A stretch of 64,000 bases of DNA from Mizuhopecten yessoensis (lineage: Eukaryota): the NCBI RefSeq assembly GCF_002113885.1, contig NW_018403789.1, positions 983,570-1,047,569 on the forward strand. Reading direction: 5' to 3'. The first letter of the stretch is position 1. Every line of letters starts with the position of its first letter. Below the pieces are notes generated by a model. It saw nothing but the letters and a program-made list of their open reading frames with translations. It was not told the DNA's origin and ran no database searches. A program made the position numbers and the translations under genes. This document shows positions 223-46,456 of this stretch, in pieces.

Positions 223-670
223 AAAATGGGTTATGAAATTTAACGAACAATCACCAAAGAAAACATCCGAGGTTGCGTGTTGATACTCACTTTGCACTGT
301 TTTGATATCTTTAAGTCTAGTTTATTGATTACAATGCGATAATTATTCTTGTAATAATGATGCATCGGTAGCTTTTCCCTCAAATAAAAATCAAATGCGC
401 ATGCGTGTCCGCCGCACCGTTTTCGCAGGCAATTTAATATCTACCCAATATGTGTAAGTTTGTTCTGTATGTCCTTGTTACATAACATTTGCTTTTGTAG
501 TCGTAATGATAATTTGGCCAAAAGTTATACAAGGACAAATTGGTTGGATGTAGCATTTTGTATTTAAATCTGAGCAAACCTCGGTTTTCACACAAAACTT
601 TGTACGTTTTTATACTAGTTCTTTCATTATTGATGATAAATATACATCTGTTTGTTTGTGTTAGTTGTAG

Positions 671-690
671 GTCACCTGGCCTTGACACAG
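671..690 (+). CDS. Candidate 20-nt microexon encoding the end of a signal peptide (xHLALTQ) of the integrin-beta-like gene
   Basis: TTGTAG acceptor at 665-670 and a consensus CAG|GTAAGT donor at 691. It ends in phase 0, matching the exon at 3383. The upstream start exon was not identified. Confidence 0.45.
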
Positions 691-869
691 GTAAGTGATT
701 ACTTTGTTTACATAAAAGACTCCAAATTAACACTAGTATAAATATATCATGGTGTAGGTTGTCTATATTAACAGGATAACGATGGCGTTATGACGTGACT
801 GTTAAGTAGCTTTATAAAATCAAATTGGTTTGATACAATGCCGCTCAGGTTTACAAGCCATTTTGTTGG

Positions 870-3085
870 TTCTGATACAATCCTACTTTGGTTGATATGT
901 CATTTAAGTTGTTCTAATTCTATCCTATTCTGGTTAACATGACATCGTAAGTGTTCTGATTCTATACCACTCTGGTTAACAGGACATTGTCGTAAGTGTT
1001 CTGATTCCATCCCCCTCTGGTTAACATGACATTGCAAGTGTTCTGATTCTATCCCATTCTGGTTAACATGACATCGTAAGTGTTCTGATTCTATCCCCCT
1101 TTGGTTAAATTGACATCGTCGTAAGTGTTCTGATTCTAACCCACTCTGGTTTACATGACATCGTAAGTGTTCTAATTATATCCTACTCTGGTTAACATGA
1201 CATTGCAAGTGTTCTGATTCTATCCCATTTTGGTTAACATGACATCGTAAGTGTTCTAATTATATCCTACTCTGGTTAACATGACATCGTAAGTGTTCTG
1301 ATTCTATCCCATTCTGGTTTACATGACATCGTAAATGTTCTGATTCTATCCCCCTTTGGTTAAATGGACATCGTCGTAAGTGTTCTGATTCTATCCCACT
1401 CTGGTTTACATGACATACAGTGTAGTAAGTGTTCTGATTATGTCCTACTCTGGTTAACATGACATCGTAAGTGTTCTGATTCTATCCTACTCTGGTTAAC
1501 ATGACATTGTAAGTGTTCTGATTCTATCCCANTATTTTTATAGTTCTGTTACAACCCCGCTCTAGTAAACATGACATTTTTATAGTTCTGATACAACCCC
1601 GCTCTGGTAAACATAACATTTTTGTTGTTCTGATACAGCCCCGCTCTGGTAAACATAACATTTTTGTAGTTCTGATACAACCCCGCTTTAGTAAACATGA
1701 CATTTTTATAGTTCTGATACAACCCCGCTCTAGTAAACATGACATTTTTGTTGTTCTGATACAACCCCGCTCTGGTAAACATGACATTTTTTATAGTTCT
1801 GATACAATCCCGCTCTAGTAAACATAACATTTTTGTAGTTCTGATACAACCCCGCTCTGGTAAACATGACATTTTTATAGTTCTGATACAACCCCGCTCT
1901 AGTAAACATGACATTTTTNNNNNNNNNNNNNNNNNNNNNNNNNNNNNNNNNNNNNNNNNNNNNNNNNNNNNNNNNNNNNNNNNNNNNNNNNNNNNNNNNN
2001 NNNNNNNNNNNNNNNNNNNNNNNNNNNNNNNNNNNNNNNNNNNNNNNNNNNNNNNNNNNNNNNNNNNNNNNNNNNNNNNNNNNNNNNNNNNNNNNNNNNN
2101 NNNNNNNNNNNNNNNNNNNNNNNNNNNNNNNNNNNNNNNNNNNNNNNNNNNNNNNNNNNNNNNNNNNNNNNNNNNNNNNNNNNNNNNNNNNNNNNNNNNN
2201 NNNNNNNNNNNNNNNNNNNNNNNNNNNNNNNNNNNNNNNNNNNNNNNNNNNNNNNNNNNNNNNNNNNNNNNNNNNNNNNNNNNNNNNNNNNNNNNNNNNN
2301 NNNNNNNNNNNNNNNNNNNNNNNNNNNNNNNNNNNNNNNNNNNNNNNNNNNNNNNNNNNNNNNNNNNNNNNNNNNNNNNNNNNNNNNNNNNNNNNNNNNN
2401 NNNNNNNNNNNNNNNNNNNNNNNNNNNNNNNNNNNNNNNNNNNNNNNNNNNNNNNNNNNNNNNNNNNNNNNNNNNNNNNNNNNNNNNNNNNNNNNNNNNN
2501 NNNNNNNNNNNNNNNNNNNNNNNNNNNNNNNNNNNNNNNNNNNNNNNNNNNNNNNNNNNNNNNNNNNNNNNNNNNNNNNNNNNNNNNNNNNNNNNNNNNN
2601 NNNNNNNNNNNNNNNNNNNNNNNNNNNNNNNNNNNNNNNNNNNNNNNNNNNNNNNNNNNNNNNNNNNNNNNNNNNNNNNNNNNNNNNNAAACCCCGCTCT
2701 AGTAAACATTACATTTTTGTAGTTCTAATACAATCCCGCTCTAGTAAACATGACATTGTTGTAGTTCTGATACAACCCCGCTCTAGTAAACATGACATTT
2801 GTGTTGTTCTAATACAACCACGCTCTAGTAAACATAACGTTTTTGTGGTTCTGATACAATCCCGGTGTAGTAAATATAATATTTGTGTAGTTCTGATAGA
2901 ACCCCGCTCCAGTTAACATAACATTTTTGCAGTTCTGATACAACCCCGCTCTGGTAAACATAACATTTTTGTAGGTCTGATACAACCCCGCTCTAGCAAA
3001 CATGACATTTTTGTAGTTCTAATACAACCCCGCTCTAGTAAACATGACATTTTTGTAGTTCTGATACAATCCTGCTCTAGAATCT
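870..3085. repeat. 42-bp satellite with two diverged sub-arrays, interrupted by an assembly gap
   Basis: Unit GTTCTGATTCTATCCCACTCTGGTTAACATGACATCGTAAGT at ~910-1530, then GTTCTGATACAACCCCGCTCTAGTAAACATGACATTTTTATA at 1535-3080. Confidence 0.95.
1919..2688. other. Assembly gap (770 N)
   Basis: Run of N with the same satellite on both sides. Confidence 1.
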
Positions 3086-3382
3086 GTCATCATGACCTTA
3101 CATTGATTCTTCTTTTTAAGTCCACCACAGTTGAGCATGAAATTTACAACGGATATATATGATTTTGTCAAATGTATCTCAACTTTCTCAACTATCTGGT
3201 CTATATTGAAATTATTTGAATCGTAAAAACGGTTCCCATCTTATCCAAAAAATCCCTGGTTAATAAGGTGAGAAGACTGATGTACCATGACGATTTCGTA
3301 ATATGTTTCATAGCAATTTTGTTTAAAAAATAGCACGTTTATTGATTTTGAAGATATAAATGTTTTTTTTCTTTTTGTTTAG

Positions 3383-3492
3383 ACTCCTCCTTGTCATGGG
3401 CACGGTACACTAAACATGGGTATGTGTGTCTGCGATCAAGGGTATATAGGTGTCAACTGCTCGTTAAGAGAGATAGACCAATGTAAAGCTTC
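3383..3492 (+). CDS. Integrin-beta-like gene exon A (I-EGF1 and start of I-EGF2): TPPCHGHGTLNMGMCVCDQGYIGVNCSLREIDQCKAS
   Basis: T-rich tract with TTTAG acceptor and GTAAGT donor; phases 0/2. Resembles the integrin beta I-EGF1 pattern C..GxGT..CG.C.C..G..G..C. Confidence 0.9.
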
Positions 3493-3584
3493 GTAAGTAT
3501 TATTAACAATATTACATATTATGGTATGTTTTTTTAATTCTGATTGACTAATCCTTGGTCTAAGGTTCGCCAATATATAGTATA

Positions 3585-4006
3585 TCCACCGTCACGATCA
3601 CTGCGGTCGGAGACGGAATTATTGTGTCCCAAAATCTCGTACAGTGACCTATGAAAACCGGTGCTTTGGGAGGGTTTCGGCCACGTTGTTGAGTAGTGGC
3701 TTACCATCTGCTACCCGGAAGTCTAAACCCTGGCCAAATGTAAGAAGGTATAAAGACCCACCTCTTCACTGCTGCATTTTAGGCTCTTTGCACAGACGTC
3801 ATGTACACATCACCCTTATATATTTATGTATATACATATTGAGATTAATATCTCCATACGTAATGTTAAAAGGTGATTTGTTTGCCTTTTATGTTATCTA
3901 TTTTCACTAAGACTATTATCCATGTGTTGTAAAGTGCTTTAGAATAATTTTATAAATAATATAGGGCGCTATATAAATATTGTTTATTATAATATCATTA
4001 TTATTA
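3585..4006 (+). mobile_element. 3' fragment of an L2-clade LINE
   Basis: Clearly similar to 36350-36580 (TGTCCCAAAATC..GTGACCTATGAAAACCGGTGCTTTG). Ends in an L2-type tail GTAAAGTGCTTTAGA...GGCGCTATATAAAT...(ATT)n. Confidence 0.75.
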
Positions 4007-4158
4007 AATAGACCCTATATTTCTATTTTTGTCTTACACGTAACCATAGCGACATCATGTTTCTAAATTATGATCCGGATATTTCCTACCATAAACCACC
4101 CATTGATTCTTACTATTTACATATGTAATATATCATGACATAATATGTAATATAACAA

Positions 4159-4419
4159 TTAAGGACTTTTGTCGAGTCTGGTACTTCGTTATATCAAACA
4201 GATAGAGTGATATCGACCGAGGACCTACAAGCATGCTTCCCCTGTGTCTCATGCTACGGGGACATTGGCTATTTGATAAATGTTGCGCTCATCGCACCTC
4301 TTCGGATTTTTTTATTTTTTTGTCTCAATTGCTCATTTTTATATCATTCTGTCAGTTTCATATAAAAACGTAACTACAGTTTCATATAACAGCGTAACTA
4401 CATCGACAAAAGTCCTTAA
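4159..4419. mobile_element. MITE with TTAA termini (Kolobok- or piggyBac-type target)
   Basis: TTAAGGACTTTTGTCGA at 4159 is the reverse complement of TCGACAAAAGTCCTTAA ending at 4419, with further imperfect subterminal pairing. Confidence 0.7.
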
Positions 4420-5597
4420 TGGATTAGGATACAGATAGAAAGCCAGATCCTATTGCACGTCATAAACGTCTTCTAAAAACAGAAACAAGAAATTAATACT
4501 TTTTCATGTTTTTTGCCTTTTTGTTGTTTTTTGTTATCTCGTTTTCCTTCTCTTAAATTGATTCAGCTCAGCAATTAAAAATGTCCTTTTATTTATTTCA
4601 AGATTTCATATTCGATGATATTATGTTGTAACGCATATTTCAAAAAAAGGATGTGAAACAGCCACCACAGTACTCAATTTTTATTTCAAAATATGCTAAA
4701 ACAGCCAAAATAATCCCATTTCTGTTTTTGGATGCATGTGTAAATTAAACAGGCATATATATAAGGATGAAAAATGACAGAAATTCGATCGCCACTTAAA
4801 GATTATCAAAATAAAACGGAGGATTAAGTCAGTGGATTGTTTAAGCTCATTTAGAAAACAGCAAATTATTTTGGTGATTTACCGTATCCCTTTTGGTTCC
4901 CCAAAAATCTACTTTCGGTCAAACGTTTGCCTTAGTTTTTGCGCATTTGATACAATAAGATATCGTTAAACAAATTAAGGAGGTGAAAATCCGGATATAC
5001 CGGGGCAAAAATGTATCTACTATCTACTGCTTACCTTTGTAAAAACCCTAAGTTACAGCACGATTTTCAGTATAAGATAGCACGAAAATTGTACAGTCAC
5101 CTAAAATTTAGAGAACAGCGTATACATGTGGCTCTATAGCTTTCCATTCGATTGTTATCGCTGTTTTTCTCTTTCATTTTCCTGCTTTAATCTACTGCTG
5201 TATATTTAAAAAAAACTCTTATTACTACATGTTATGTAAAACAAGAAAATGACAAAGATATCTTATATATTGACAATTGCGTTAAAGATCTATGGGTTCC
5301 CATTCGATTGTTATCGATACTTTTCCCTTTCATTTGCCAGCTTCATATCTACTGCTTTTCTACAACTGCTCCATACATGAAAGCAAAGTCACAGAGGTGT
5401 CAAACAAAAAAATACATGTTACACCATCCCTTCATAAAAAAACCGATAGAATATTATTTTGTATCATTATGTTATCAATAACCCTGTCTGTTCTCACGTT
5501 TTATGTAAGAATCAATAACGTTATCTATTTCTATGTAAAACGGCATTTGTTCTTGTGATTGATCTTTTTTGTAATTGCTATTTCTATCATTTGACAG

Positions 5598-5670
5598 GGG
5601 AGCCAACTCTGTCTGCTCGGGACACGGGGATTGTATAGATGGAATGTGTCTGTGTCAGTCTAGAGGCGAT
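5598..5670 (+). CDS. Integrin-beta-like exon B (I-EGF2): GANSVCSGHGDCIDGMCLCQSRGD
   Basis: TTGACAG acceptor and GTGAGT donor; phases 2/0; CSG.G.C..G.C.C motif. Confidence 0.92.
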
Positions 5671-6489
5671 GTGAGTAAAACCTACGTTAGACAGAACACT
5701 CCAGTCTCTCAAACGTCCATTTAAACTAATGTATAGCCAGATCTGATTATCTTTATTTTTACAGTTTAATTATGTTTCGTTTCAAAGAGCCCCTCCCCCC
5801 GTTTTAGAGAACGGAAATGTTCGGTCTAAAATTCAAGAATGCGTACATGTCTGTCCATATGTCTGTTACATGAATAATTTAATTTAGTTAAACATTCCAT
5901 TCAAAATCTAATGTAAAGAGTATATCGCATACATTGACTTAAACAGATAGTTACAGGATATGATTAGTCTTAAACGTTGTGTTTGAGGATTATTATTCCT
6001 TTTACACATTTTAGGGGTTTAGATCAACACTTGGTAAAAACAATCCCGAATGCAGGTCTTTGATATGTCCTCGTTTGTTGACATTCCCGTGTGTTTCTAG
6101 TTGTTTACGTCCTGTTAAAAGGATTTAAAAAACATATTAGTAGCGAGTCTGAACTGGGTCGATCATCGGTACCGACCTTGTGAGAACGCCTGTCTAATAC
6201 TGTGGAGGTCTCGTGTTCCGTTTCGATTCTGGCTGCATTTTCCTACTATTGTGATACGTGAACGTGGCGTTGACGGGTTTCCTATGCAAACTGAGAATAT
6301 ACATTTATGTACCCACAGTAGTGAAATTTTGAAAGAAATGTGACATTTTTTTGTGATTCGTTATGAATTACAGGATACAATTCATTCTGCATACGATTAT
6401 AAGATGGAGGTAACACACACACACCCACACACACAGGTGATATCACCTAAATAATTTGGTTAAAGATACAGTATGCCGAAAAATAAATG

Positions 6490-27300: not shown

Positions 27301-29482
27301 GTGCCACCATGTACCCAACCTCCCTTTCAAGAACCGCAAAAAGCACTCAGCAATTACGGATTTATCTAATAAATATCAGCCAAGTAATACTCTACTTTTT
27401 TAAAGAATATACTACTCTCTAACACAATCAAAATAGTTATATTCATTAAAACAACTAGTGTACATTTTTCTCATTACTTGATATAGTATAAATATTCATC
27501 TAGATGTAGGTTGTGCCTAAACTGTGTTCTTTTCACACGTAATTACGAGATTATATATCGCTTGCCTCAAGTGTTGAAGGTAATACACGACAGCGGAGGT
27601 AGGGAAAGTACCGCCCTGAGCGTCGAAATTTAAAGTAATATTTCAGAATGGTTTTTATTATAGTGTTTTATGGTAAGGACAAAGTCTATTGTATTTTCTA
27701 AAAGAGAGGCGTATTCCATTTTACAATTTATAACATAATTTCGTCATTTACCAACCTCTACTGATGCATCAAATAAAGTCTACAAAACTAAGAGTGTTAA
27801 AGGCGATATGTCTTATTTACTTTCATGAAAGTACCGCGGTGAAATAGCGTGGGCTATTATTTGCCATATGTCTGCGTGTTGACAGCAATGTCAGCCTCTT
27901 GCCACGTGGTTTACCACCATCACAACCGTACTAGCAATGCTTTATTACTCAGGAGTCCTAGATTTTATGGGTATTATTAGACCTGATGACAATGTGTATG
28001 CAACATTATATAGCAAAAACAAGACATGTCGAACCTGCTCCCCGATGGATTAGCTGTCAGAACGCGATCAAACTCAGATACTATTTTAGCTCTCCCAAAA
28101 TAGAGGTATGTTTTCAACATAAAATGTTATACTGATTATCTCAAAAAACGCAATGTATTGTTTGCAGACTTCATCAGATCTAGAGAAATATGAACTTTGT
28201 CAAAGTAACTATGAACAGTCAGATGACCTGTGACTATTATTTGCACTTTTGGGCAGGCTTGGATTCTATATTGTTTTGAACTCTCTTTTTCTCTCATCAA
28301 TATGATAGATCTGGCAATTCGTATTTTTCTTACACAACACAAGTTATTATCTTTCCGTTATTACCACCCCCAGGAAGTGAAACGTGTCACAAATATGAAA
28401 TAAGAAGGAATTTTATTTTGTTTCTTACGCGTGTTAAATAATTCAATATTTTACATAAAGCTAAGCATGCGCAGACATGTACGATGCAATGGCAGCTGAA
28501 AGCCGATCAACAGTGTAAATAAGCGAAAGTGAAAATCGATGAAGCCTTACACCAATGAAATGTGCTTAATGATGTAAAATTGTTTGTGTATTATCATTTC
28601 TCATACAAAACTCAAGGAACACATGGCCGTGTTAAAATGTGTTATTTTGGGCCCTTTTTTGCGGAAGAAAAGTCAATAAAATATACTTAAGAAGAATAAG
28701 TGAGAATAATTTCATTCGTTATTGAAATTATCATTGTAACATCAGCTGCTCACATCAATCTGTGCTTACAACGTAGACGTCTCCCTCATCAGCTATATGA
28801 TATACATTACAATTTTACTTTCTTGATAGTTACATTATACTTTTCCCGTTTTAATATTTAGCGTAGAGTCTATTCTATCAACACGAACAGGCTTAAAGAG
28901 ACGAATTTGTGTCACGTCCTCAATACATTTATTAAGTATGCCAGGTCACAAATGCCACCAAGGTAAATTTTAACGAGAATCTTCTTGTAATGTAATGCCG
29001 ATGTCCATTTGCTCTTCCTTTGAGGAGTGCAAACACGCAACATTAGTATGACTGCATTCTGACTTGACAAATTACCTTGATAGTTCACGCCACATCCATA
29101 TGGCGCAGTAGTGCCAAGAAATCTTACGTAATGTTTCTCATTATCTACGGCACGGGGTACTAAATGAAGGGGTTTTGTTTGGATGATAAATGTTATCTAA
29201 AGTATGGACATTCATAGAAAGAATAGATTGGTCAGGATGTTGAAATGTTTACATGAACATCAATTTTCTCAATGCTGACCATTCGTTCGGTGTTGCAACT
29301 GTCACCTTGTTGCACAAACGTTTATCAAACCATAGTTAGCACACCTAATACCATTTTGCATTTCATTGGCTCAAAGCTCCTTATACAAAAATAATTCAGT
29401 GAGGGAACTGCTCTATGCCTAAACAGTAATGTAGGTCTTACAGTTATCATTTCAGCAGGTCCTACAGTTTATAATTACACAG

Positions 29483-33366: not shown

Positions 33367-33445
33367 GACCTGCACAGATTTTCCGGCACATTCTGTGAAT
33401 GTGATGATCACAGCTGTCCATACTTTGAAGATGAAGTTTGTGGGG
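33367..33445 (+). CDS. Integrin-beta-like exon C (I-EGF2/3): DLHRFSGTFCECDDHSCPYFEDEVCGG
   Basis: TTTCAG acceptor and GTAAGC donor; phases 0/1. Diagnostic integrin beta motif G.FCECD..SC.......CGG. Confidence 0.95.
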
Positions 33446-36646: not shown

Positions 36647-36756
36647 GACACGACAGGGGCTGGTGTGAATGCGGTACATGTCGATGTAACAGTGGATTTT
36701 TGGGCGAGGATTGCTCCTGTCCTACAGCTATAGACCGGTGTACAGCGGACGACGGG
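36647..36756 (+). CDS. Integrin-beta-like exon D (I-EGF3/4): HDRGWCECGTCRCNSGFLGEDCSCPTAIDRCTADDG
   Basis: TTTTACAG acceptor and GTACGT donor; phases 1/0; canonical I-EGF cysteine spacing. Confidence 0.95.
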
Positions 36757-37847: not shown

Positions 37848-38975
37848 TTAGCTCACCGGGTCCAAAGGACCAAGGTGAGCTTATGCCATACCGTGGCGTC
37901 CGTCGTCCGTCCGTCCGTCGTCCGTCGTCCGTCCGTCAACAATTTCTTTAAACGACTTCTTCTTCTTAAACACTTATTGGAATTTAACTAAATTTGACTG
38001 GAAGCATCCCTAGGTGGTGTGGATTCAAAATTGTACAAATGGTTGGGCTGACCCCCCAGGGGGCTGAGGGGCGGGGCAATAAGGGGGCAATTTGGCTATA
38101 TGCTTTAAGCGACTTCTTCTCTGGAACTAAGAGATAGATATCAACCATATTTGACTGGAAGCATCCCTAGGTGGTGGGGATTCAAAATTGTACAAATTGT
38201 GGGGCTGACCCCCCAGGGGGCTGAGGGCTGGGCCAAAAGGGGGCAATTTGGCTATATTGCCTTAAATGACTTCTTCCGTAAAACTATACCATGGATATTG
38301 ATCATATTTGGTCAGAAGCATTCATGGGAGGCAGGGATCCAAAATTGTACAAATGGTCGGGCTGACCCCCCGGGCTAAGGGGTGGGGTCTTTTTTTTTTT
38401 TACTTGAAAATAGTTGAGATCCCAACCATATAACCATATATACAATTGTTGAGTATAACGAGAGGAATGCACATTTGCTTCCAGGATGGCCCTAGGGTCT
38501 GGCCCCACCCTTGGAGACTTAACCCCTGGGTCATAACTTTGAAACGGTTAATATCCCCACCCCAAAACTATATATACAATTGTTGGGCATAAAGAGACGA
38601 ATGCAGTCATGATATTAGAATTGACCCAAGGGTCTGCCCCACCCTTGCAGACATAACCCCTGGGTCATAACTTTGAAACGGTTGAGATCCCCACCCCAAA
38701 ACTTAATATACAAATGCTGGGCAAAAAGAGACAAATGCAGTCATGATATTAGAATTGATCCTGGGGTCTGGCCACAACCCTAGGGACCTAGTTTCTGAGT
38801 CACAGCTTGGAAACAGTTGAGATCCCCACCCCATAACCTTACATAAAATTGCTGTGCATAAAAAAATGATTGGCCTTGAGGTCTGGCATATTCCGTTGGA
38901 TCTCATTTGGAGAATATTTTGCCATGATTGCTTAGATATCCAGGTGAGCGATACAGGCCCTCTGGGCCTCTTGTT
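37848..38975 (+). mobile_element. Non-autonomous Helentron-type (HINE / pearl-like) element
   Basis: 5' TT-AGCTCACC-hairpin-GGTGAGCT, (GTCC/GTC)n microsatellite, internal tandem cores of ~165 and ~120 bp, and 3' CAGGTGAGC plus hairpin AGGCCCTCTGGGCCT-CTTGTT. Inserted in a T-rich site of a ~39-bp repeat. Confidence 0.88.
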
Positions 38976-39254
38976 TCCTTTTAGTCACATACAGACGTAA
39001 AACATCAATTATTTCCTTTTAGTCACATACAGACGTAAAACGTCAATTATTTCCTTTTATTTGTTCATCAGCATATTATGATGAATTAGTATATAAGTTT
39101 TGTATTTATTCATTTCTCGGCGTCGGTGTTGCTAAATTTAATGTAAGATTCAACATTTGTGGATAAAAGGGCACGTTGAATTTTAGGAAAGATTTTAAAC
39201 TAGCAGGGGCACTGGGCAGATAGCGGTCGTCGCTGCACCCAGCATGTTGGGCCT

Positions 39255-42200
39255 GGGGACTTCCCTGCCGTTATGGGAGGACTACCCTGTCGTTATGGGG
39301 GGGCTACCCTGTCGTTATGGGGGGATTACCCTGTCGTTATGGGGGGACTACCCTGCCGTTATGGAGGGATTGCCCTGTCGTTATGGGGGGACTNGGGGGG
39401 ACTACCCTGTCGTTATGGGGGGACTACCCTGTCGTTATGGGGGGACTACCCTGTCGTTATGGGGGGACTACCCTGTAGTTATGGGGGGATTATCCTGTCG
39501 TTATGGGGGGACTCCCCTGTACTTATGGGGGAACTACCCTGTCGTTATGGGGGGACTATCCTGTCGTTATGGGGGGACTACCCTGTCGTTATGGAGGGAT
39601 TGCCCTGTCGTTATGGGGGGACTACCCTGTCGTTATAGGGGAACTACCCTGTCGTTATGGGGGCACTACCCTGTCGTTATGGGGGACTACCTTGTCGTTA
39701 TGGGGGGACTATCTTGTCGTTATTGGGGACTACCCTGTCGTTATGGGGGGACTACCCTGTCGTTATGGGGGGACNTTGTCGTTATGGGGTGACTATCCTG
39801 ACGTTATGGGGGGACTACCCTGTCGTTATGGGGGGACTACCCTGTCGTTATAGGGGAACTACCCTGTCGTTATGGGGGCACTACCCTGTCGTTATGGGGG
39901 ACTACCTTGTCGTTATGGGGGGACTATCTTGTCGTTATTGGGGACTACCCTGTCGTTATGGGGGGACTACCCTGTCGTTATGGGGGGACTACCCTGTCGT
40001 TATGGGGGGACTACCCTGTCGTTATGGGGGACTACCCTGTCGTTATGGGGGATTACCCTGTCGTTATGGGGGGGACTACCCTGTCGTTATGGGGGGACTA
40101 CCTTGTCGTAATGGGGGACTATCCTGTCGTTATGGGGGGATTACCCTGTCGTTATGGGGGGACTACCCTGTCGTTATTGGGGACTACCCTGTCGTTATGG
40201 GGACTACCCTGTCGTTATGGGGGGACTACCCTGTCGTTATAGGGGGACTACCCTGTCGTTATTGGGGCACTACCCTGTCGTTATGGGGGGACAACCCTGT
40301 CGTTATGGGGGGACTATCCTGTCGTTATGGGGGACTACCCTGTCGTTATGGGGGACTACCCTGTCGTTATGGGGGTCTACCCTGTCGTTATGGGGGGACT
40401 ACCCTGTCGTTATGGGAGGACTACCATGTCGTTATGGGGAACTACCCTGTCGTTATGAGGGGACTATCCTGTCGTTATGGGGGGACTACCATGTCGTTAT
40501 GGGGGGACTACCATGTCGTTATGGGGGGACTACCATGTCGTTATGGGGGGACTACCATGTCGTTATGGGGAAATACTCTGTCGTTATGGAGGGACTATCC
40601 TGTCGTTATGGGGGGACTACCTTGTCGTTATGGGGGGACTATCCTGTCGTTATGGGGGGACTACCAAGTCGTTATGGGGGGACTACCATGTCGTTATGGG
40701 GAAATACTCTGTCGTTATGGAGGGACTATCCTGTCGTTATGGGGGGACTACCTTGTCGTTATGGGGGGACTATCCTGTCGTTATGGGTGGACTACCCTGT
40801 CGTTATGGGGAAACTACCTTGTCGTTATGGGGGGACTATCCTGTCGTTATGGGGGGACTACCTTGTCGTTATGGGGGGACTATCATGTCGTTATGGGGGG
40901 ACTACCCTGCCGTTATGGGGGGAACTACCCTGTCGTTATGGGGGATATACCCTGTCATTATGGGGGGACTACCCTGTCGTTAACGGGGGACTACCCTGTC
41001 TACTCGTTATGGGGGAACTACCCTGTCGTTATAGGGGGACTACCCTGTCGTTATAGGGGGACTACCCTGTCGTTATAGGGGTACTACCCTGTCGTTATGG
41101 GGGAACTACCCTGTCGTTATGGGGGAAATTCCCTGTCGTTATGGGGAACTTCCTCGTCGTTATGGGGGGACTCCCTTGTCGTTATGGGGGGACTACTCTG
41201 TCGTTATGGGGGACTAACATGTCGTTATGGGGGACTCCCATGTCGTTATGGGGGACCACCCTGTCGTTATGGGGATCTACCCAGTCGTTATGGGGGGACT
41301 ACCCTGTCGGTTTGGGGGGGACTACCCTGTCGTTGTGGGGGACCTACCCTGTCGTTATAGGGGTACTACCCTGTCGTTATGGGGGGGACTATCCTGTCGT
41401 TGTGGGAGGACTACCCTGTCGGTATGGGGGGACTACCCTGTAGTTATGGGGGGATTATCCTGTCGTTATGGGGGACCTCCCCTGTCGTTATGGGGAACGA
41501 CCTCGTCGTTATGGGGGGACTCCCCTGTACTTATGGGGGAACTACCCTGTCGTTGTGGGGGACCTACCCTGTCGTTATGGGAGGACTTCCCTGTCGTTAT
41601 GGGGGGAGTACCCTGTCGTTATGGGGGTACTACCCTGTCGTTAGGGGGGAACTATCCTGTCGTTATGGGGGGCCTACCCTGTCGTGATGGGGGAACTTCC
41701 CGGTCGTTATGGGGGGACTACCATGTCCTTACCGGGCGAATACCATGTCGTTATGGGGGGACTACCATGTCCTTACCGGGCGAATACCATGTCGTTATGG
41801 GGGGCTACCTTGTCGTTATGGGGAACTACCCTGTCGTTATAGGGGGCCTCCCCTGTCGTTAGGGGGGGACTACCTTGTCGTTATGGCGGGACTACCCTGT
41901 CGTTACTGGGGAACTACCCTGTCGACTCGTTATGGGGGACTACCCTGGCGTTATGGGGGAACTACCCTATCGACTCGTTATGGGGGGACGACCCTGTCGT
42001 TGTGGGGGGACTATCCTGTCGGTATAGGGGGACTATCCTGTCATTATTGGGGAACTACCCTGTCGTTCCGGGGGGATTAACCTGTCGTTATGGGGGAACT
42101 TCCCTGTCGTTATGGGGGACTAACATGTCGTTATGGGGGACTCCCATGTCGTTATGGGGGACTACCTCGTCGTTATGGGGGGACTCCCTTGTCGTTATGG

Positions 42201-44098
42201 GGGGACTATCCTGCGGTTATGGGAGGACTACCCTGCCGTTATGGGGGGACTCCCCTGTACTTATGGGGGGACTACCCTGGCGTTATGGGGGGACTACCCT
42301 ATCGACTCGTTATGGGGGGCCTACCTTGTCGTTATGGGGGGACTAACCTGTCGTTATAGGGGTACTGCCCTGTCGTTATGGGGGAAATTCCCTGTCGTTA
42401 TGGGGAACGACCTCGTCGTTATGGGGGGACTCCCCTTTCGTTATGGGGGGACTTTCCTGTCGTTATGGGGGGAGTACCCTGTCGTTATGGGGGACCTACC
42501 CTGTCGTTATAGGGGAACTACCCTGTCGTTCCGGGGGGATTAACCTGTCGTTATGGGGGAACTACCCTGTCGTTATGGGGGGACTACCCTGTCGTTATGG
42601 GGGAAATACCCTGTCGTTATGGGGAACTACCTCGTCGTTATGGGGGGACTACCCTGTCGTTATGGGGGGACTATCCTGTCGTTATGGGAGGACTACCCTG
42701 TCGTTATGGGGGACTACCATGTCGTTATGGGGGACTACCCTGTCGTTATGGGGGGACTACCCTGTCGACTCGTTATGGGGGGACTACCCTGTCGACTCGT
42801 TAGGGGGGAACTACCCTGTCGTTATGGGGGGACTCCCCTGTCGTTAGGGGGGCCTACCCTGTCGTTATGGGGGAACTACCCTGTCGTTTTGGGGGACTAC
42901 ACTGTAGACTCGTTATGGGGGAACTACCCTGTCGTCATGGGGGGACTACCCTGTCGTTATGGGGGGATTACCCTGTCGTTATGGGGGGAACTACCCTGTC
43001 GACTCGTTATGGGGGGACTACCCTGTCGGTATGGGGGGACTACCCTGTCGTTATAGGGGGACTATCCTGTCGATATGGGGGTACTACCCTGTCGTTATGG
43101 GGGGACTGCCCTGTCGTTATGGGGGACTACCCTGTCGGCTCGTTATGGTGGAACTACCCTGTCGTTATGTGGGGACTACCCTGTCGTTATGGGGGAAATA
43201 CCCTGTCGTTACGGGGAACTACCTCGTCGTTATGGGGGGCCTACCCTGTCGTTATGGGGGACTACCCTGTCGTTATGGGGGAAATACCCTGTCGTTATGG
43301 GGGACTACCATGTCGTGATGGGGGACTACCCTGTCGTTATGGGGGACTACCCTGTCGACTTGATATGGGGGTACTACCCTGTCGTTATGGGGGACTATCA
43401 TGTCGTTATGGGGGGACTACCCTGCCGTTATGGGGGGACTACCTTGTCGTTATGGGGGGACTACCCTGTCGGTATGGGGGGACTATCCTGTCGTTATGGG
43501 GGGACTACCCTGGCGTTATGGGGGGACTACTCTGTCGTTATGGGGGGACTACCCTGCCGTTATGGGGGGACTACCTTGTCGTTATGGGGGGACTACCCTG
43601 TCGTTAGGGGGGGACTACCCTGTCGTTATGGGGGGAACTTCCCTGTCGTTATGTTGGGACTACCCTGTCGCTATGGGGGGGACTACCCTGTCGTTATGGG
43701 GGAACTTCCCTGTCGTTATGGGGAACTACCTCGTCGTTATGGGGGGACTACCCTGTCGTTATGGTGGACTACCCTGTCGTTATGGGGGACTACCATGTCG
43801 TGATGGGGGACTACCCTGTCGTTATGGGGGGACTCCCCTGTCGTTATGGGGGAACTACCCTGTCGTTATGTTGGGACTACCCTGTCGTTATGGGGGGGAC
43901 TACCCTGTCGTTATTGGGGGACTACCCTGTCGTTATGGGGGACTACCCTGTCGACTCGTTATGGTGGAACTACCCTGTCGTTATGTTGGGACTACCCTGT
44001 CGTTATGGGGGGAACTACCCTGTCGTTATGTTGGGACTACCCTGTCGTTATGGGGGGACTACCCTGTCGTTATGGGGGGACTACCCTGTCGTTATGGA
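39255..44098. repeat. G-rich 21-22-bp minisatellite, ~220 copies
   Basis: Unit TTATGGGGGGACTACCCTGTCG. It accounts for all the GGLPCRY/WGDYPVVM ORFs. Confidence 0.99.
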
Positions 44099-44186: not shown

Positions 44187-44315
44187 CGTATTTGTAGTGG
44201 AAACGGAAACTGTCGCTGTAACAGGTGTGTCTGTATCAACGGGTACATGGGACCCACGTGTAGTGAGGGTAGGGAGATCGTACCGAAACAATCCTCATCC
44301 AAGTCATTCATGTCG
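44187..44315 (+). CDS. Integrin-beta-like exon E (I-EGF4 plus linker): RICSGNGNCRCNRCVCINGYMGPTCSEGREIVPKQSSSKSFMS
   Basis: CCATAG acceptor and GTAAGT donor; phases 0/0. Confidence 0.92.
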
Positions 44316-44645: not shown

Positions 44646-44778
44646 GATTTTACCGACGTGTGTAATTTATGGATACCGTGTGTTCTGTGTGTGGGTTTTA
44701 ATTCCGGTGAGAAAGATGTTGAAGAATGCGAAGAAGATTGCAGCATAAATAGAATTCACATGGTAGACGCATTGCCAG
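44646..44778 (+). CDS. Integrin-beta-like exon F (beta-tail, N-terminal half): DFTDVCNLWIPCVLCVGFNSGEKDVEECEEDCSINRIHMVDALP
   Basis: TTTGCAG acceptor and GTAAGC donor; phases 0/1. Beta-tail motif C.....CV.C..F..GE......C...C. Confidence 0.93.
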
Positions 44779-45564: not shown

Positions 45565-45678
45565 ACACACCAGACAACCGTGTTTGTCGACATAAAGATA
45601 CGGATCAGTGTATGGTCACATTCTCACACACCGACCAGTCATTTTACGCCATGTCCGTGTATGTTCAACAAACCAAAA
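45565..45678 (+). CDS. Integrin-beta-like exon G (beta-tail, C-terminal half): DTPDNRVCRHKDTDQCMVTFSHTDQSFYAMSVYVQQTK
   Basis: Long T tract with TTTCAG acceptor and GTAAGG donor; phases 1/1. Motif C..KD.D.C...F......V.V. Confidence 0.93.
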
Positions 45679-46274
45679 GTAAGGCTTACATTTTGTAAAA
45701 TTTCTTCGCGCATGCGCACTTCTGATCGCTCCAATTTATGTCATTCAACGGTTAGAAAAATCCGCATTATTTCAATTAGACAATATTAGTATTTTGATAA
45801 AAAAAAACAAAAAAAAAACCGTTGAATCCATCCTTCAAGAAACTGCTGATGAATACTGCAAAGTGCACATTAAAGAAATAAAGATAATACAGACATTTTA
45901 GCTTGAGGGTATTTTGTTTTTTCGTGTTTCTCGGAGTTTAAAGACCCAACATCGTACATATTAAGCAACCACAAAAGGCAGATTATTCTCTTAGATGAGA
46001 ATGTGATTTTTTTTTTATTATAATACAGAATTCCCTTCGCGTACCACTAATGAAGGGAGAGAACTCTAACAGAAGATAACTTGAAAACCCAAATGATTTT
46101 AGATTACAGAAAGAAAGCCCTTCGCGTACCACTATTGAAGGGAGACAACTCTGATAGTTGCTAATGTGAAAAAATCCATTAATTTTAAATCACAGAAAGC
46201 CCTCCGCTTACCACTAACGAAGGGAGAGAACTTTAATAGATAAGAATACATAAAAAACACATTTTTCTTTTCAG

Positions 46275-46456
46275 AATGCCCTCCGCCTACTCTTACCCCG
46301 GAGGCTGGAGTGATGAAAGCTAACCAGTTATCCGATGATACAAACAATGACGACGATGACACAAAAGACGGATCCAGTGGATCATCTAAAGTCTATTACA
46401 CTTGCAATCTGCTATACTTATTGTGCCTAATGTTCACGATATCTGTTCTGTCATGA
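46275..46456 (+). CDS. Integrin-beta-like terminal exon H: KCPPPTLTPEAGVMKANQLSDDTNNDDDDTKDGSSGSSKVYYTCNLLYLLCLMFTISVLS* (GPI-signal-like end)
   Basis: TTTTCAG acceptor, phase 1. Supplies the final beta-tail CP, then a polar linker, small residues, a 15-aa hydrophobic end and TGA at 46454-46456. Confidence 0.88.

What the first reader, a model, noticed from the sequence alone, without database searches (positions are those of the whole stretch)
395..3400. The protein appears headless: a signal-peptide end splices directly onto I-EGF1
Seen: 671-690 has an acceptor and a consensus CAG|GTAAGT donor and reads xHLALTQ in frame with TPPCHGHG. Extending that frame upstream gives IYICLFVLVVGHLALTQ (640-690), a signal-peptide-like run, bounded by TAA at 637, with an out-of-frame ATG at 633. 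An NRF1-like TGCGCATGCGT lies at 396-406. In exon A the I-EGF1 C5 (GTFECG in integrins) is replaced (GTLNMG), so its upstream partner C1 is not needed. Inference: the mature protein begins near QTPPC, without the PSI, hybrid or betaI ligand-binding domains. Either the start exon lies upstream of the window or this assembly has a small indel at ~636-645. Caveats: T/G-rich acceptor tracts translate as hydrophobic by chance, and the 770-N gap could hide exons.
Basis: partly seen in the sequence, partly recalled or inferred. Interest (0 to 1): 0.75.

Follow-up and report, generated by a model that had tools for sequence, protein, structure and literature searches.

The report
Headless integrin-beta stalk gene of scallops
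This Yesso scallop gene really does make an integrin-beta "leg" with no ligand-binding head: a signal peptide is joined straight to the EGF stalk and tail domain, probably on a lipid anchor. It is a scallop counterpart of the vertebrate stand-alone stalk protein ITGBL1, and RefSeq already holds this model under a misleading name.

Summary
The headless reading holds. The 5' details need correcting.

**The gene.** The window is Mizuhopecten yessoensis scaffold C462. The gene is RefSeq XP_021360936.1, "integrin beta-3-like", 332 aa.

**What RNA shows.** A spliced 1,353-nt RNA contig contains the joints 690->3383 and 3492->5598. Its sequence runs from exon 2 back into a start exon about 3.8 kb upstream of the window (MGLCRLTCWIVAFG).

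- The exon is 665-690, not 671-690.
- "IYICLFVL" is the intron's pyrimidine tract.
- No indel is needed, and an independent DNA run shows none.
- The N gap lies inside intron 2, within one 42-bp satellite.

**No head.**
- Only 431 nt of the contig precede exon 2.
- No betaI, PSI or cytoplasmic-tail match was found on the 1.2-Mb scaffold.
- Four other scallops, one represented only by an mRNA contig, share the same N-terminus.

**Architecture.** Signal peptide, partial I-EGF1, I-EGF2-4, beta-tail domain, acidic linker, and a C-terminus that looks like a GPI signal.
- An RGD is invariant in all five sequences.
- A paralogue on scaffold C4734 shares the derived features.
- Intron positions match a canonical beta gene, so the origin is a 5'-truncated DNA duplication.

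**Function.** I infer integrin modulation by analogy with ITGBL1. This is untested.

**Verdict.** A new variant of a known kind, of moderate interest.

The parts
396..406 (+). NRF1-like palindrome TGCGCATGCGT. It lies inside intron 1, about 4.4 kb downstream of the real first exon, so it is not the promoter of the observed transcript.
   Evidence: Sequence read. Rarer than chance. Exon 1 is at L020:6185-6227.
640..664 (+). 3' end of intron 1: pyrimidine/T-G-rich tract plus the acceptor ttag.
   Evidence: X1 depth in bin 560-733 equals 26 nt only, and the loose end lies before 663.
665..690 (+). Exon 2, a 26-nt micro-exon. It encodes the second and third bases of the codon for V15 (its first base, G, is the last letter of exon 1), then V16-Q23 (VGHLALTQ), the end of the signal peptide. 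The donor is CAG|GTAAGT.
   Evidence: Exact match to P0001. RNA joint 690->3383 with 26 letters on the short side. Aligns to the related mRNA L022:290-317.
691..3382 (+). Intron 2. It holds two 42-bp satellite arrays (869-1531; 1534-1918 and 2690-3080) and the assembly gap 1919-2688 inside the second array.
   Evidence: The RNA contig skips it with GT..AG ends.
3383..3492 (+). Exon 3: T24 to the first two bases of S60. It encodes the partial I-EGF1 (C3, C6, C7 and C8 kept; C5 replaced by Met) and the start of I-EGF2 (C1 replaced by Leu).
   Evidence: RNA pieces and joints.
5598..5670 (+). Exon 4: middle of I-EGF2 (C5 replaced by Asp). It ends with the invariant RGD, codons 5662-5670.
   Evidence: RGD invariant in all five pectinid sequences.
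33367..33445 (+). Exon 5: end of I-EGF2 and start of I-EGF3 (DLHRFSGTFCECDDHSC...). It is reached across a 27.7-kb intron that the canonical beta gene lacks.
   Evidence: The X1 loose end behind 5671 reads the start of this exon. The canonical gene has exons 4 and 5 fused.
36647..36756 (+). Exon 6: I-EGF3 and the start of I-EGF4.
44187..44315 (+). Exon 7: I-EGF4 plus a disordered linker (residues 176-190).
44646..44778 (+). Exon 8: first half of the beta-tail domain.
   Evidence: This exon, searched by reference, retrieved P0001.
45565..45678 (+). Exon 9: second half of the beta-tail domain.
   Evidence: PF07965 covers residues 195-277.
46275..46456 (+). Exon 10: acidic and Ser-rich linker, a small-residue stretch (GSSGSS), an uncharged hydrophobic C-terminus that looks like a GPI signal, and the TGA stop.

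Best explanation
**What it is.** An intact, expressed, 10-exon scallop gene: XP_021360936.1 / OWF55818.1, annotated 'integrin beta-3-like', 332 aa.

**What it encodes.** Only the lower leg of an integrin beta subunit:
- signal peptide (exon 1 upstream of the window, plus micro-exon 665-690);
- the C-terminal two thirds of I-EGF1;
- I-EGF2, I-EGF3 and I-EGF4;
- a complete beta-tail domain;
- an acidic disordered linker;
- a C-terminal signal of GPI-attachment type.

It has no PSI, hybrid or betaI (ligand-binding) domain, no transmembrane helix followed by a tail, and no NPxY cytoplasmic domain.

**How it arose (inferred).** A DNA-level partial duplication of a canonical beta gene, cut at the intron inside I-EGF1. 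New 5' exons then supplied a signal peptide. The disulphide whose partner was lost (I-EGF1 C1-C5) and the I-EGF2 C1-C5 pair were later lost in a consistent way. The gene then duplicated again, giving the paralogue on scaffold C4734.

**How it most likely works (inferred, not shown).** It is displayed on the outer membrane leaflet as a stand-alone integrin stalk. There it would modulate integrin activation or adhesion, as the vertebrate stand-alone stalk ITGBL1/TIED does when secreted. The invariant, flexible RGD loop in I-EGF2 is a candidate contact site.
For: **Gene model**
- The exon map reproduces P0001 residue for residue.

**Transcript**
- X1 contig, 1,353 nt, depth 60.7: joints 690->3383 and 3492->5598. 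Its loose ends read the end of exon 1 and the start of exon 5.
- Introns are not covered, and no such joints occur in DNA run X15.

**No head**
- Only 431 nt of the contig precede exon 2.
- PF00362, PF17205 and PF08725 match only other scaffolds.
- Pfam on the protein finds only EGF-type families and Integrin_B_tail, at 52.8 bits against a cut-off of 33.6.

**Collinear with the integrin leg**
- Residues 26-275 align to beta2 residues 436-674, E 4.6e-25.
- The AF2 model (pLDDT 76) gives integrin beta chains as its top Foldseek hits, E about 1e-22.

**Conservation**
- Orthologues are 60-79% identical, with the same signal peptide-to-I-EGF1 junction.
- An intronless mRNA contig from another species, L022, has stops upstream of the ATG in all frames.
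- pN is 0.22-0.25 against a saturated pS of 0.78-0.85.

**Origin**
- Intron positions and phases are shared with the canonical gene on C4918.
- The paralogue shares the extra exon 4|5 intron, the lost cysteines and a GPI-like end.

**GPI-type C-terminus**
- Small residues, a spacer, then 15-20 uncharged hydrophobic residues running to the last residue, in three orthologues (Ylistrum, Pecten and the Logan-contig species; the Argopecten model stops short of this region) and in the paralogue.
- 34 Cys, an even number, remain outside the two signal sequences.

**ITGBL1 precedent**
Against: - Only one RNA run of this species gave a spliced contig, and that library is labelled metatranscriptomic. 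The raw-read RNA run X21 showed essentially no expression, and X2 laid nothing.
- Of the 431 nt before exon 2, I saw only the last 30 letters. An upstream non-coding exon, or a short extra coding piece of up to about 129 aa, is not formally excluded.
- Signal-peptide cleavage and GPI attachment are judged by inspection and hydropathy alone. No SignalP or PredGPI was available.
- Pfam searches of a spliced genome work exon by exon and can miss short exons.
- Function is entirely by analogy. The protein is not an ITGBL1 orthologue, and the RGD is absent from the paralogue.
Confidence: 0.87

Rival explanations
1. The 332-aa model is a truncated annotation of an ordinary full-length integrin beta gene. 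Its head exons would lie further upstream or in assembly gaps.
For: - Intron 1 holds a 2.66-kb N gap and intron 2 a 770-N gap.
- Between the in-frame stop at L020:6008 and the ATG there is an acceptor-like ttcttacag.
- Exon-wise Pfam searches have limited sensitivity.
Against: - The RNA contig runs exon 1 -> 665-690 -> 3383 with nothing between them, and has only about 388 nt ahead of the ATG. A head needs about 1,300 nt.
- Exon 1 begins with ATG plus a hydrophobic signal sequence.
- The related mRNA contig has stops in all frames ahead of the ATG.
- Four independent gene models start the same way.
- There is no betaI or PSI match on the 1.2-Mb scaffold.
Confidence: 0.03
2. The protein starts inside the window at the ATG at 633. 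An assembly indel near 636-645 would restore the frame MI..IYICLFVLVVGHLALTQ.
For: - ATG at 633, an AAA run at 637-639, and a hydrophobic reading of 640-690.
Against: - An independent DNA contig (X15) covers 560-826 with no indel.
- RNA covers only 665-690 and continues into exon 1, upstream of the window.
- Orthologues read ...FGVVGHLALTQ, matching exon 1 plus exon 2.
Confidence: 0.01
3. The locus is a decaying relic of a partial duplication. It is transcribed but has no function.
For: - Partial duplicates often decay.
- Several cysteines of I-EGF1 and I-EGF2 are lost.
- Expression was absent in one tissue run.
Against: - All 10 exons are open, with canonical GT..AG borders.
- The cysteines were lost as matched pairs, leaving an even count.
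- There are 60-79% identical orthologues in at least four other pectinids. Every remaining ectodomain Cys is conserved among them, and both terminal signals are kept in the three whose models reach the C-terminus.
- pN is well below the saturated pS.
- Contig depth is 60.7.
Confidence: 0.04
4. The protein is the same headless one, but it is not GPI-anchored. The C-terminal hydrophobic run would be a tail-less transmembrane anchor, or the protein would be secreted, for example as an acidic EGF-type shell or matrix component.
For: - No predictor or experiment was available.
- The model draws residues 313-331 as a helix.
- The Asp-rich linker (DDTNNDDDD) recalls acidic matrix proteins.
Against: - The hydrophobic run reaches the very last residue in three orthologues and the paralogue (the Argopecten model is truncated). 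There are no charged residues in the last 18 in the three RefSeq sequences and one, the final residue, in the Logan-contig sequence.
- It is preceded by G/S/N-rich small residues. This is the textbook GPI-signal layout.
Confidence: 0.2

Closest known systems
ITGBL1 / TIED (vertebrate integrin beta-like 1)
   Same: - A signal peptide is followed only by integrin-type EGF stalk repeats.
- There is no PSI, hybrid or betaI head and no cytoplasmic tail.
- It was described as a stand-alone integrin stalk and shown to be a secreted inhibitor of integrin activation (PMC8921176).
   Different: - ITGBL1 has ten I-EGF repeats, no beta-tail domain and no membrane anchor (domain count from the title of Berg et al. 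1999 as cited; the rest from my own knowledge).
- The scallop protein has 3.5 repeats collinear with I-EGF1-4 of canonical beta subunits, keeps the whole beta-tail domain, and ends in a GPI-type signal.
- Its nearest sequences are canonical beta legs. An ITGBL1-like hit (P0011) reaches only 40% identity over 40% of the query.
- It is therefore an independent origin, not an orthologue.
Canonical integrin beta subunits (scallop genes on scaffold C4918; human beta2/beta3 structures 7usl_B, 3fcs_B)
   Same: - The leg is collinear from mid I-EGF1 to the end of the beta-tail domain, at 31-35% identity.
- Intron positions and phases are shared with the scallop canonical gene.
   Different: - It lacks PSI, hybrid and betaI (MIDAS) domains, the transmembrane helix and the NPxY tail.
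- It has lost the I-EGF1 C5 and the I-EGF2 C1-C5 pair.
- It has gained an intron inside I-EGF2.
Paralogue in the same genome (C4734:~240.4-261.7 kb; loci L009, L021, L010)
   Same: - It has the same architecture, the same exon borders including the extra exon 4|5 intron, the same lost cysteines and a GPI-like C-terminus.
- A satellite with an N gap also sits in its first intron.
   Different: - Its signal peptide is unrelated and encoded by a single exon (MDKTWLQFRFGLLLLLFF...).
- It has no RGD.
- I did not show that it is expressed or annotated.
Decapod 'integrin beta-4-like / pat-3-like' short proteins (P0022 Homarus, P0027, P0028 Palaemon)
   Same: - They carry I-EGF repeats plus a beta-tail domain without a betaI domain or cytoplasmic tail.
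   Different: - They have a long basic, disordered N-terminal region instead of a direct signal peptide-to-EGF junction.
- They end just after the beta-tail domain with no hydrophobic C-terminus.
- They are only about 30-35% identical, and the relationship was not analysed.

Membership tests
Integrin beta subunit (canonical) | betaI (vWFA-like) ligand-binding domain with MIDAS, Pfam PF00362 | tested here: not met
   PF00362 was not found in P0001. In the genome it matches only scaffold C4918, not C462. The transcript has only 431 nt ahead of exon 2.
Integrin beta subunit (canonical) | N-terminal PSI and hybrid domains | tested here: not met
   No PF17205 match on C462 or in P0001. The PDB alignment starts at beta2 residue 436, inside I-EGF1.
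Integrin beta subunit (canonical) | Four integrin-type EGF repeats followed by the beta-tail domain | tested here: met
   EGF_integrin 46.4 bits and Integrin_B_tail 52.8 bits, both above their cut-offs. Collinear alignment to beta2 436-674. Foldseek top hits are integrin beta legs. I-EGF1 is only partial, and I-EGF1 and I-EGF2 lack the C1-C5 bond.
Integrin beta subunit (canonical) | Transmembrane helix plus cytoplasmic tail with NPxY motifs (PF08725) | tested here: not met
   No PF08725 match on C462 or in P0001. The protein ends in the hydrophobic run itself.
ITGBL1 / TIED stand-alone integrin stalk | Signal peptide followed by integrin EGF repeats with no head domains | tested here: met
ITGBL1 / TIED stand-alone integrin stalk | Ten tandem I-EGF repeats, no beta-tail domain, freely secreted | tested here: not met
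   The scallop protein has 3.5 repeats, a full beta-tail domain and a hydrophobic C-terminus. ITGBL1's secreted state is from PMC8921176.
ITGBL1 / TIED stand-alone integrin stalk | Orthology (closest relatives are ITGBL1 sequences) | tested here: not met
   Beyond the pectinid orthologues, the profile search gives canonical beta fragments. One ITGBL1-like fragment (P0011) reaches 40% identity over 40% coverage. Shared introns point to a scallop canonical beta gene as the source. No tree was built.
GPI-anchored surface proteins | N-terminal signal peptide | tested here: inconclusive
   Hydrophobic core in residues 6-20, drawn as a helix in the model, conserved, with small residues before Q23. 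No SignalP run was possible.
GPI-anchored surface proteins | C-terminal signal: small omega-site residues, a short spacer, then an uncharged hydrophobic stretch ending the protein | tested here: inconclusive
   The pattern is present in P0001, P0002, P0003 and P0005 and in the paralogue. This is by inspection only, with no predictor.
GPI-anchored surface proteins | Release by PI-PLC / presence of a lipid anchor | not testable with these tools
   Needs an experiment.

The most novel reading that the evidence does not exclude
Scallops would have turned a beheaded integrin beta subunit into a lipid-anchored integrin regulator, or even an integrin ligand. A GPI-tethered stalk-plus-tail module would use its invariant, flexible RGD loop in I-EGF2 to engage RGD-binding integrins in cis or trans. 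Alternatively, it would compete for alpha-subunit leg contacts. Either way it would tune adhesion in a lineage-specific manner, independently of vertebrate ITGBL1.
Probability: 0.15. Interest if true: 0.65.

Novelty: new variant of a known kind. Interest (0 to 1): 0.4.

Why it matters
- **Annotation.** Several RefSeq entries named "integrin beta-3-like" in scallops cannot be integrin subunits. They have no ligand-binding head and no cytoplasmic tail. Expression and immunity studies that count them as integrins would misread them.
- **Biology.** Stand-alone integrin stalks appear to have arisen more than once: ITGBL1 in vertebrates, this one in pectinids, and perhaps another in decapods. The origin here is traceable: truncation at an intron, a new signal-peptide exon, and matched loss of orphaned cysteines.
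- **A possible test system.** If the GPI anchor and the RGD are functional, the protein offers a simple natural system for asking what the lower beta leg does on its own.
- **Limits.** The gene model itself is already public, and the function is unproven.

Tried and rejected
**Searches that found nothing**
- The look-up of encoding contigs for P0001: nothing on record.
- The protein's accessions and several ITGBL1/invertebrate term sets: no paper. The two scallop papers that mention integrin beta concern other proteins.
- Pfam on exon 5 alone: no match.

**Runs that gave nothing**
- X2 laid no contig. Raw-read RNA run X21 gave one read, so neither a transcription start nor read-level junction counts could be obtained.

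**Limits reached**
Upstream of the window I read four separate 10-kb pieces, at about 0-10, 20-30, 40-50 and 60-70 kb. For the rest of the scaffold I relied on genome-wide family searches.
- dN/dS could not be computed as a ratio because synonymous sites are saturated.

**Idea considered and dropped**
- A start at ATG 450-452 with donor ATGT|GTAAGT spliced to 671 would give MCHLALTQ. It has no signal peptide and is contradicted by the RNA contig.

Exon 8 was searched by reference, and later searches used the database protein that it returned.
- Exons were joined only in memory, inside scripts, to check identity with that protein and to map codons.
- The N gaps were neither filled nor looked up.
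Full report
**Where we are**

The window is G000:C462:983570-1047569, plus strand, in a 988-Mb assembly of 82,659 contigs. The protein recovered below is recorded as Mizuhopecten yessoensis, the Yesso scallop.

**Checking the observation**

- TGCGCATGCGT at 396-406;
- ATG at 633-635 and TAA at 637-639;
- the frame that ends ...VVGHLALTQ at 690;
- a CAG|GTAAGT donor at 690/691;
- a strong acceptor (ttttttttctttttgtttag) before ACT CCT CCT TGT at 3383.

The frame of the 3383 exon is fixed independently. It ends with two spare bases (TC|gtaagt at 3492). The next Cys-rich exon begins with one base after its acceptor (cag|G at 5598), which gives ...QCKAS-GANSVC.

Pfam places the exons as integrin or teneurin-type EGF repeats and, at 44646-44778, as the integrin beta-tail domain.

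**Finding the gene model**

I searched exon 8 alone, by reference, against the representative protein library. It returned one protein, P0001, 332 aa and 100% identical. This is OWF55818.1 / XP_021360936.1, "integrin beta-3-like".

- Its N-terminus reads MGLCRLTCWIVAFGVVGHLALTQ|TPPCHGHG.
- The first 14 residues map to L020:6185-6226, which is C462:979754-979795, about 3.8 kb upstream of the window. One more base and a GGAG|gtaatt donor follow.
- The remaining nine exons are 665-690, 3383-3492, 5598-5670, 33367-33445, 36647-36756, 44187-44315, 44646-44778, 45565-45678 and 46275-46456. Together with exon 1 they reproduce P0001 exactly, and all have GT..AG borders.
- 'IYICLFVL' is the pyrimidine tract of intron 1.

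**RNA and the gap**

The scan's program asked that the gap be tested first. I laid two runs on record as RNA (one kept as Logan contigs, one as raw reads), a third only guessed to be RNA, and one DNA run on 560-5750.

Run X1 holds a 1,353-nt contig at depth 60.7.
- Its pieces lie on 3381-3492 and 5598-5671.
- It shows the joints 690->3383 (GT..AG, 26 letters on the short side) and 3492->5598.
- Its loose end before 663 reads TCGTCTGACATGTTGGATCGTTGCGTTTGG, which is the end of exon 1.
- Its loose end behind 5671 reads the start of exon 5.
- Bin depths equal exon length times 60.7, so the introns are not covered.

The DNA run X15 shows none of these joints. It covers 560-826 with a single substitution, at 701, and no indel. 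The "assembly indel at 636-645" alternative is therefore rejected.

The gap at 1919-2688 has the same 42-bp satellite, in the same orientation, on both sides, and the spliced RNA skips it. It lies within intron 2, in one satellite array. It hides no exon of this transcript and has no bearing on the reading frame.

**Is the protein really headless?**

- Exon 3 starts at position 460 of the contig. Only 431 nt precede exon 2, of which 43 are coding and about 388 are leader. A PSI-hybrid-betaI head needs roughly 1,300 nt.
- Genome-wide exon-wise searches find betaI (PF00362), PSI (PF17205) and the cytoplasmic domain (PF08725) on scaffold C4918, where two canonical beta genes sit. None is found on the 1.2-Mb scaffold C462.
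- Orthologous models in Ylistrum balloti, Pecten maximus and Argopecten irradians begin the same way.
- So does a 1,586-nt intronless Logan contig from run SRR26445938 (L022). Its leader has stops in all three frames ahead of the ATG. L022 aligns piecewise and in order to exons 1, 2, 3, 4, 5, 8 and 9.

**What the protein is**

- Residues 26-275 align without rearrangement to integrin beta2 residues 436-674, from mid I-EGF1 to the end of the beta-tail domain, at E 4.6e-25. Beta3 and beta1 align likewise.
- Pfam gives Integrin_B_tail at 52.8 bits and EGF_integrin at 46.4 bits.
- An AlphaFold2 model from a 22-sequence alignment has mean pLDDT 76. The EGF and tail domains score 80-93. The linkers 179-191 and 281-311 are disordered.
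- Its best Foldseek matches are integrin beta chains, at E about 1e-22.

- The I-EGF1 Cys of 'FLECG' is Met here.
- In I-EGF2 both partners of the integrin-specific C1-C5 bond are replaced, C1 by Leu51 and C5 by Asp74.
- All four orthologues and the paralogue show the same losses.
- 34 Cys, an even number, remain outside the two signal sequences.

The C-terminus has an acidic, Asn-rich linker, then small residues (GSSGSS, NGS or GAS), a short spacer, and an uncharged hydrophobic run that reaches the last residue. The paralogue and the three orthologues whose models reach the C-terminus share this layout; the Argopecten model stops short of it. It is the layout of a GPI-attachment signal. I infer a GPI anchor from it, but I had no predictor and no experiment.

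SRGDDLHRFSG, with RGD at residues 82-84 (window 5662-5670), is invariant in all five pectinid sequences. It lies in a lower-confidence loop (block pLDDT 69). The paralogue has no RGD.

**Origin**

A canonical beta gene on C4918 has introns at equivalent places around the exons that correspond to our exons 3, 6, 7 and 8, and at the end of exon 5. In particular it has an intron inside I-EGF1, just upstream of the C3 cysteine. That is where our gene's homology to integrin begins. Our exons 4 and 5 are a single exon in that gene.

A second headless gene lies on C4734.
- It has its own signal-peptide exon, MDKTWLQFRFGLLLLLFFYKTLLHSSFAM|gtattg.
- This is followed by RRSPQC..., the same extra exon 4|5 intron in the same phase, the same lost cysteines and a GPI-like end.

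The simplest history is a DNA-level duplication truncated at the I-EGF1 intron. The copy then acquired a signal-peptide exon, lost the orphaned disulphides, gained an intron, and duplicated again. This history is an inference from shared characters. I built no tree.

Selection: against L022, pN is 0.22-0.25 in the EGF and tail regions, while pS is saturated at 0.78-0.85. The gene is under constraint and is not a relic.

**How it probably works**

- Shown: the architecture, the splicing, the expression in at least one run, and the conservation.
- Inferred: the protein is displayed on the outer leaflet as a stand-alone beta leg and affects integrin activation or adhesion.

The only functional precedent is ITGBL1/TIED. 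[quoted passage not shown] The scallop protein is not its orthologue. It has 3.5 repeats collinear with canonical I-EGF1-4, it keeps the tail domain, its nearest sequences are canonical legs, and an ITGBL1-like hit covers only 40% of it.

I put about 0.87 on the structural statement. I put about 0.3-0.4 on integrin modulation as the function, and about 0.15 on the specific idea that the RGD loop is an integrin contact.

**Novelty**

The gene model is public, and stand-alone integrin stalks are a known kind. New here, as far as the searchable literature shows, are:
- the recognition that these "integrin beta-3-like" scallop entries are headless and tailless;
- the retained tail domain with a probable GPI anchor;
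- the invariant RGD;
- the paralogue;
- the traceable origin.

I rate it a new variant of a known kind, with moderate interest.

The absence of non-pectinid orthologues is weak evidence for restriction to scallops. That search depends on shared words and a length band, and it did not even return the paralogue.

Noticed in passing
G000:C4734:~240,400-261,700 (L009:4413-4499 signal-peptide exon; L009:~5993-6122; further exons in L021 and L010): A second headless integrin-beta-like gene with the same exon plan, the same lost cysteines and a GPI-like C-terminus. Its signal peptide is unrelated and it has no RGD. Its first intron also holds a satellite with an N gap. It did not appear among the protein-database hits.
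   Followed up: partly
window 5662-5670: RGD (R82-G83-D84) sits inside an 11-residue block, SRGDDLHRFSG, that is invariant in all five pectinid sequences. It lies in a lower-confidence (pLDDT about 69) loop of I-EGF2.
   Followed up: partly
L020:6185-6227 and window 665-690 compared with L022:236-317: The signal-peptide exons are unusually conserved at the nucleotide level (about 90% identity, pS 0.30 over 22 codons). Synonymous sites elsewhere in the gene are saturated (pS about 0.8). This may reflect a constraint on the 5' end of the mRNA, or chance in a small sample.
   Followed up: no
window 869-1531: The first 42-bp satellite array of intron 2 carries a donor-like TCGTAAGT in nearly every unit, about 15 copies, just downstream of the real donor at 691. 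The RNA contig shows no use of these sites. It recalls the splice-site satellite reported in the P450 gene at 51.7-58.3 kb of this window.
   Followed up: no
window 38000-44000: Intron 6 holds a G+C-rich region (48-57% against about 35% elsewhere) with a strong GC-skew. It reads as repeated ...GGLPCRYGG... in one frame (41079-41357).
   Followed up: no
window 396-406; also 28463-28473 and 45708-45718 (minus strand, 1 mismatch each): NRF1-like GCGCATGCGC-type palindromes occur more often than shuffles predict (3 against 0.26 expected). The first lies in intron 1 and the third in intron 9 of this gene. Their function is unknown.
   Followed up: partly
proteins P0022, P0027, P0028 (Homarus, Palaemon, a Logan contig): Decapod proteins of about 320-430 aa. 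P0027, the longest, has a signal peptide and a long basic disordered region ahead of three I-EGF repeats and a beta-tail domain; P0022 and P0028 start without a signal peptide and may be 5'-incomplete models. All three stop right after the tail domain. This may be another independent headless integrin-beta derivative.
   Followed up: no
proteins P0009, P0010, P0018 (fish 'integrin beta-1-like' and Logan contigs): Fish sequences with a signal peptide, PSI and hybrid-like region, I-EGFs and a tail domain, but no betaI match. They may be isoforms or genes lacking betaI.
   Followed up: no
window 3518-3865 and 4736-5083: DNA-run depth rises to hundreds or thousands here (5069 in bin 3518-3691). 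About 120 bases of the first stretch recur at 86-91% identity on many scaffolds. These are dispersed repeats inside intron 3.
   Followed up: no
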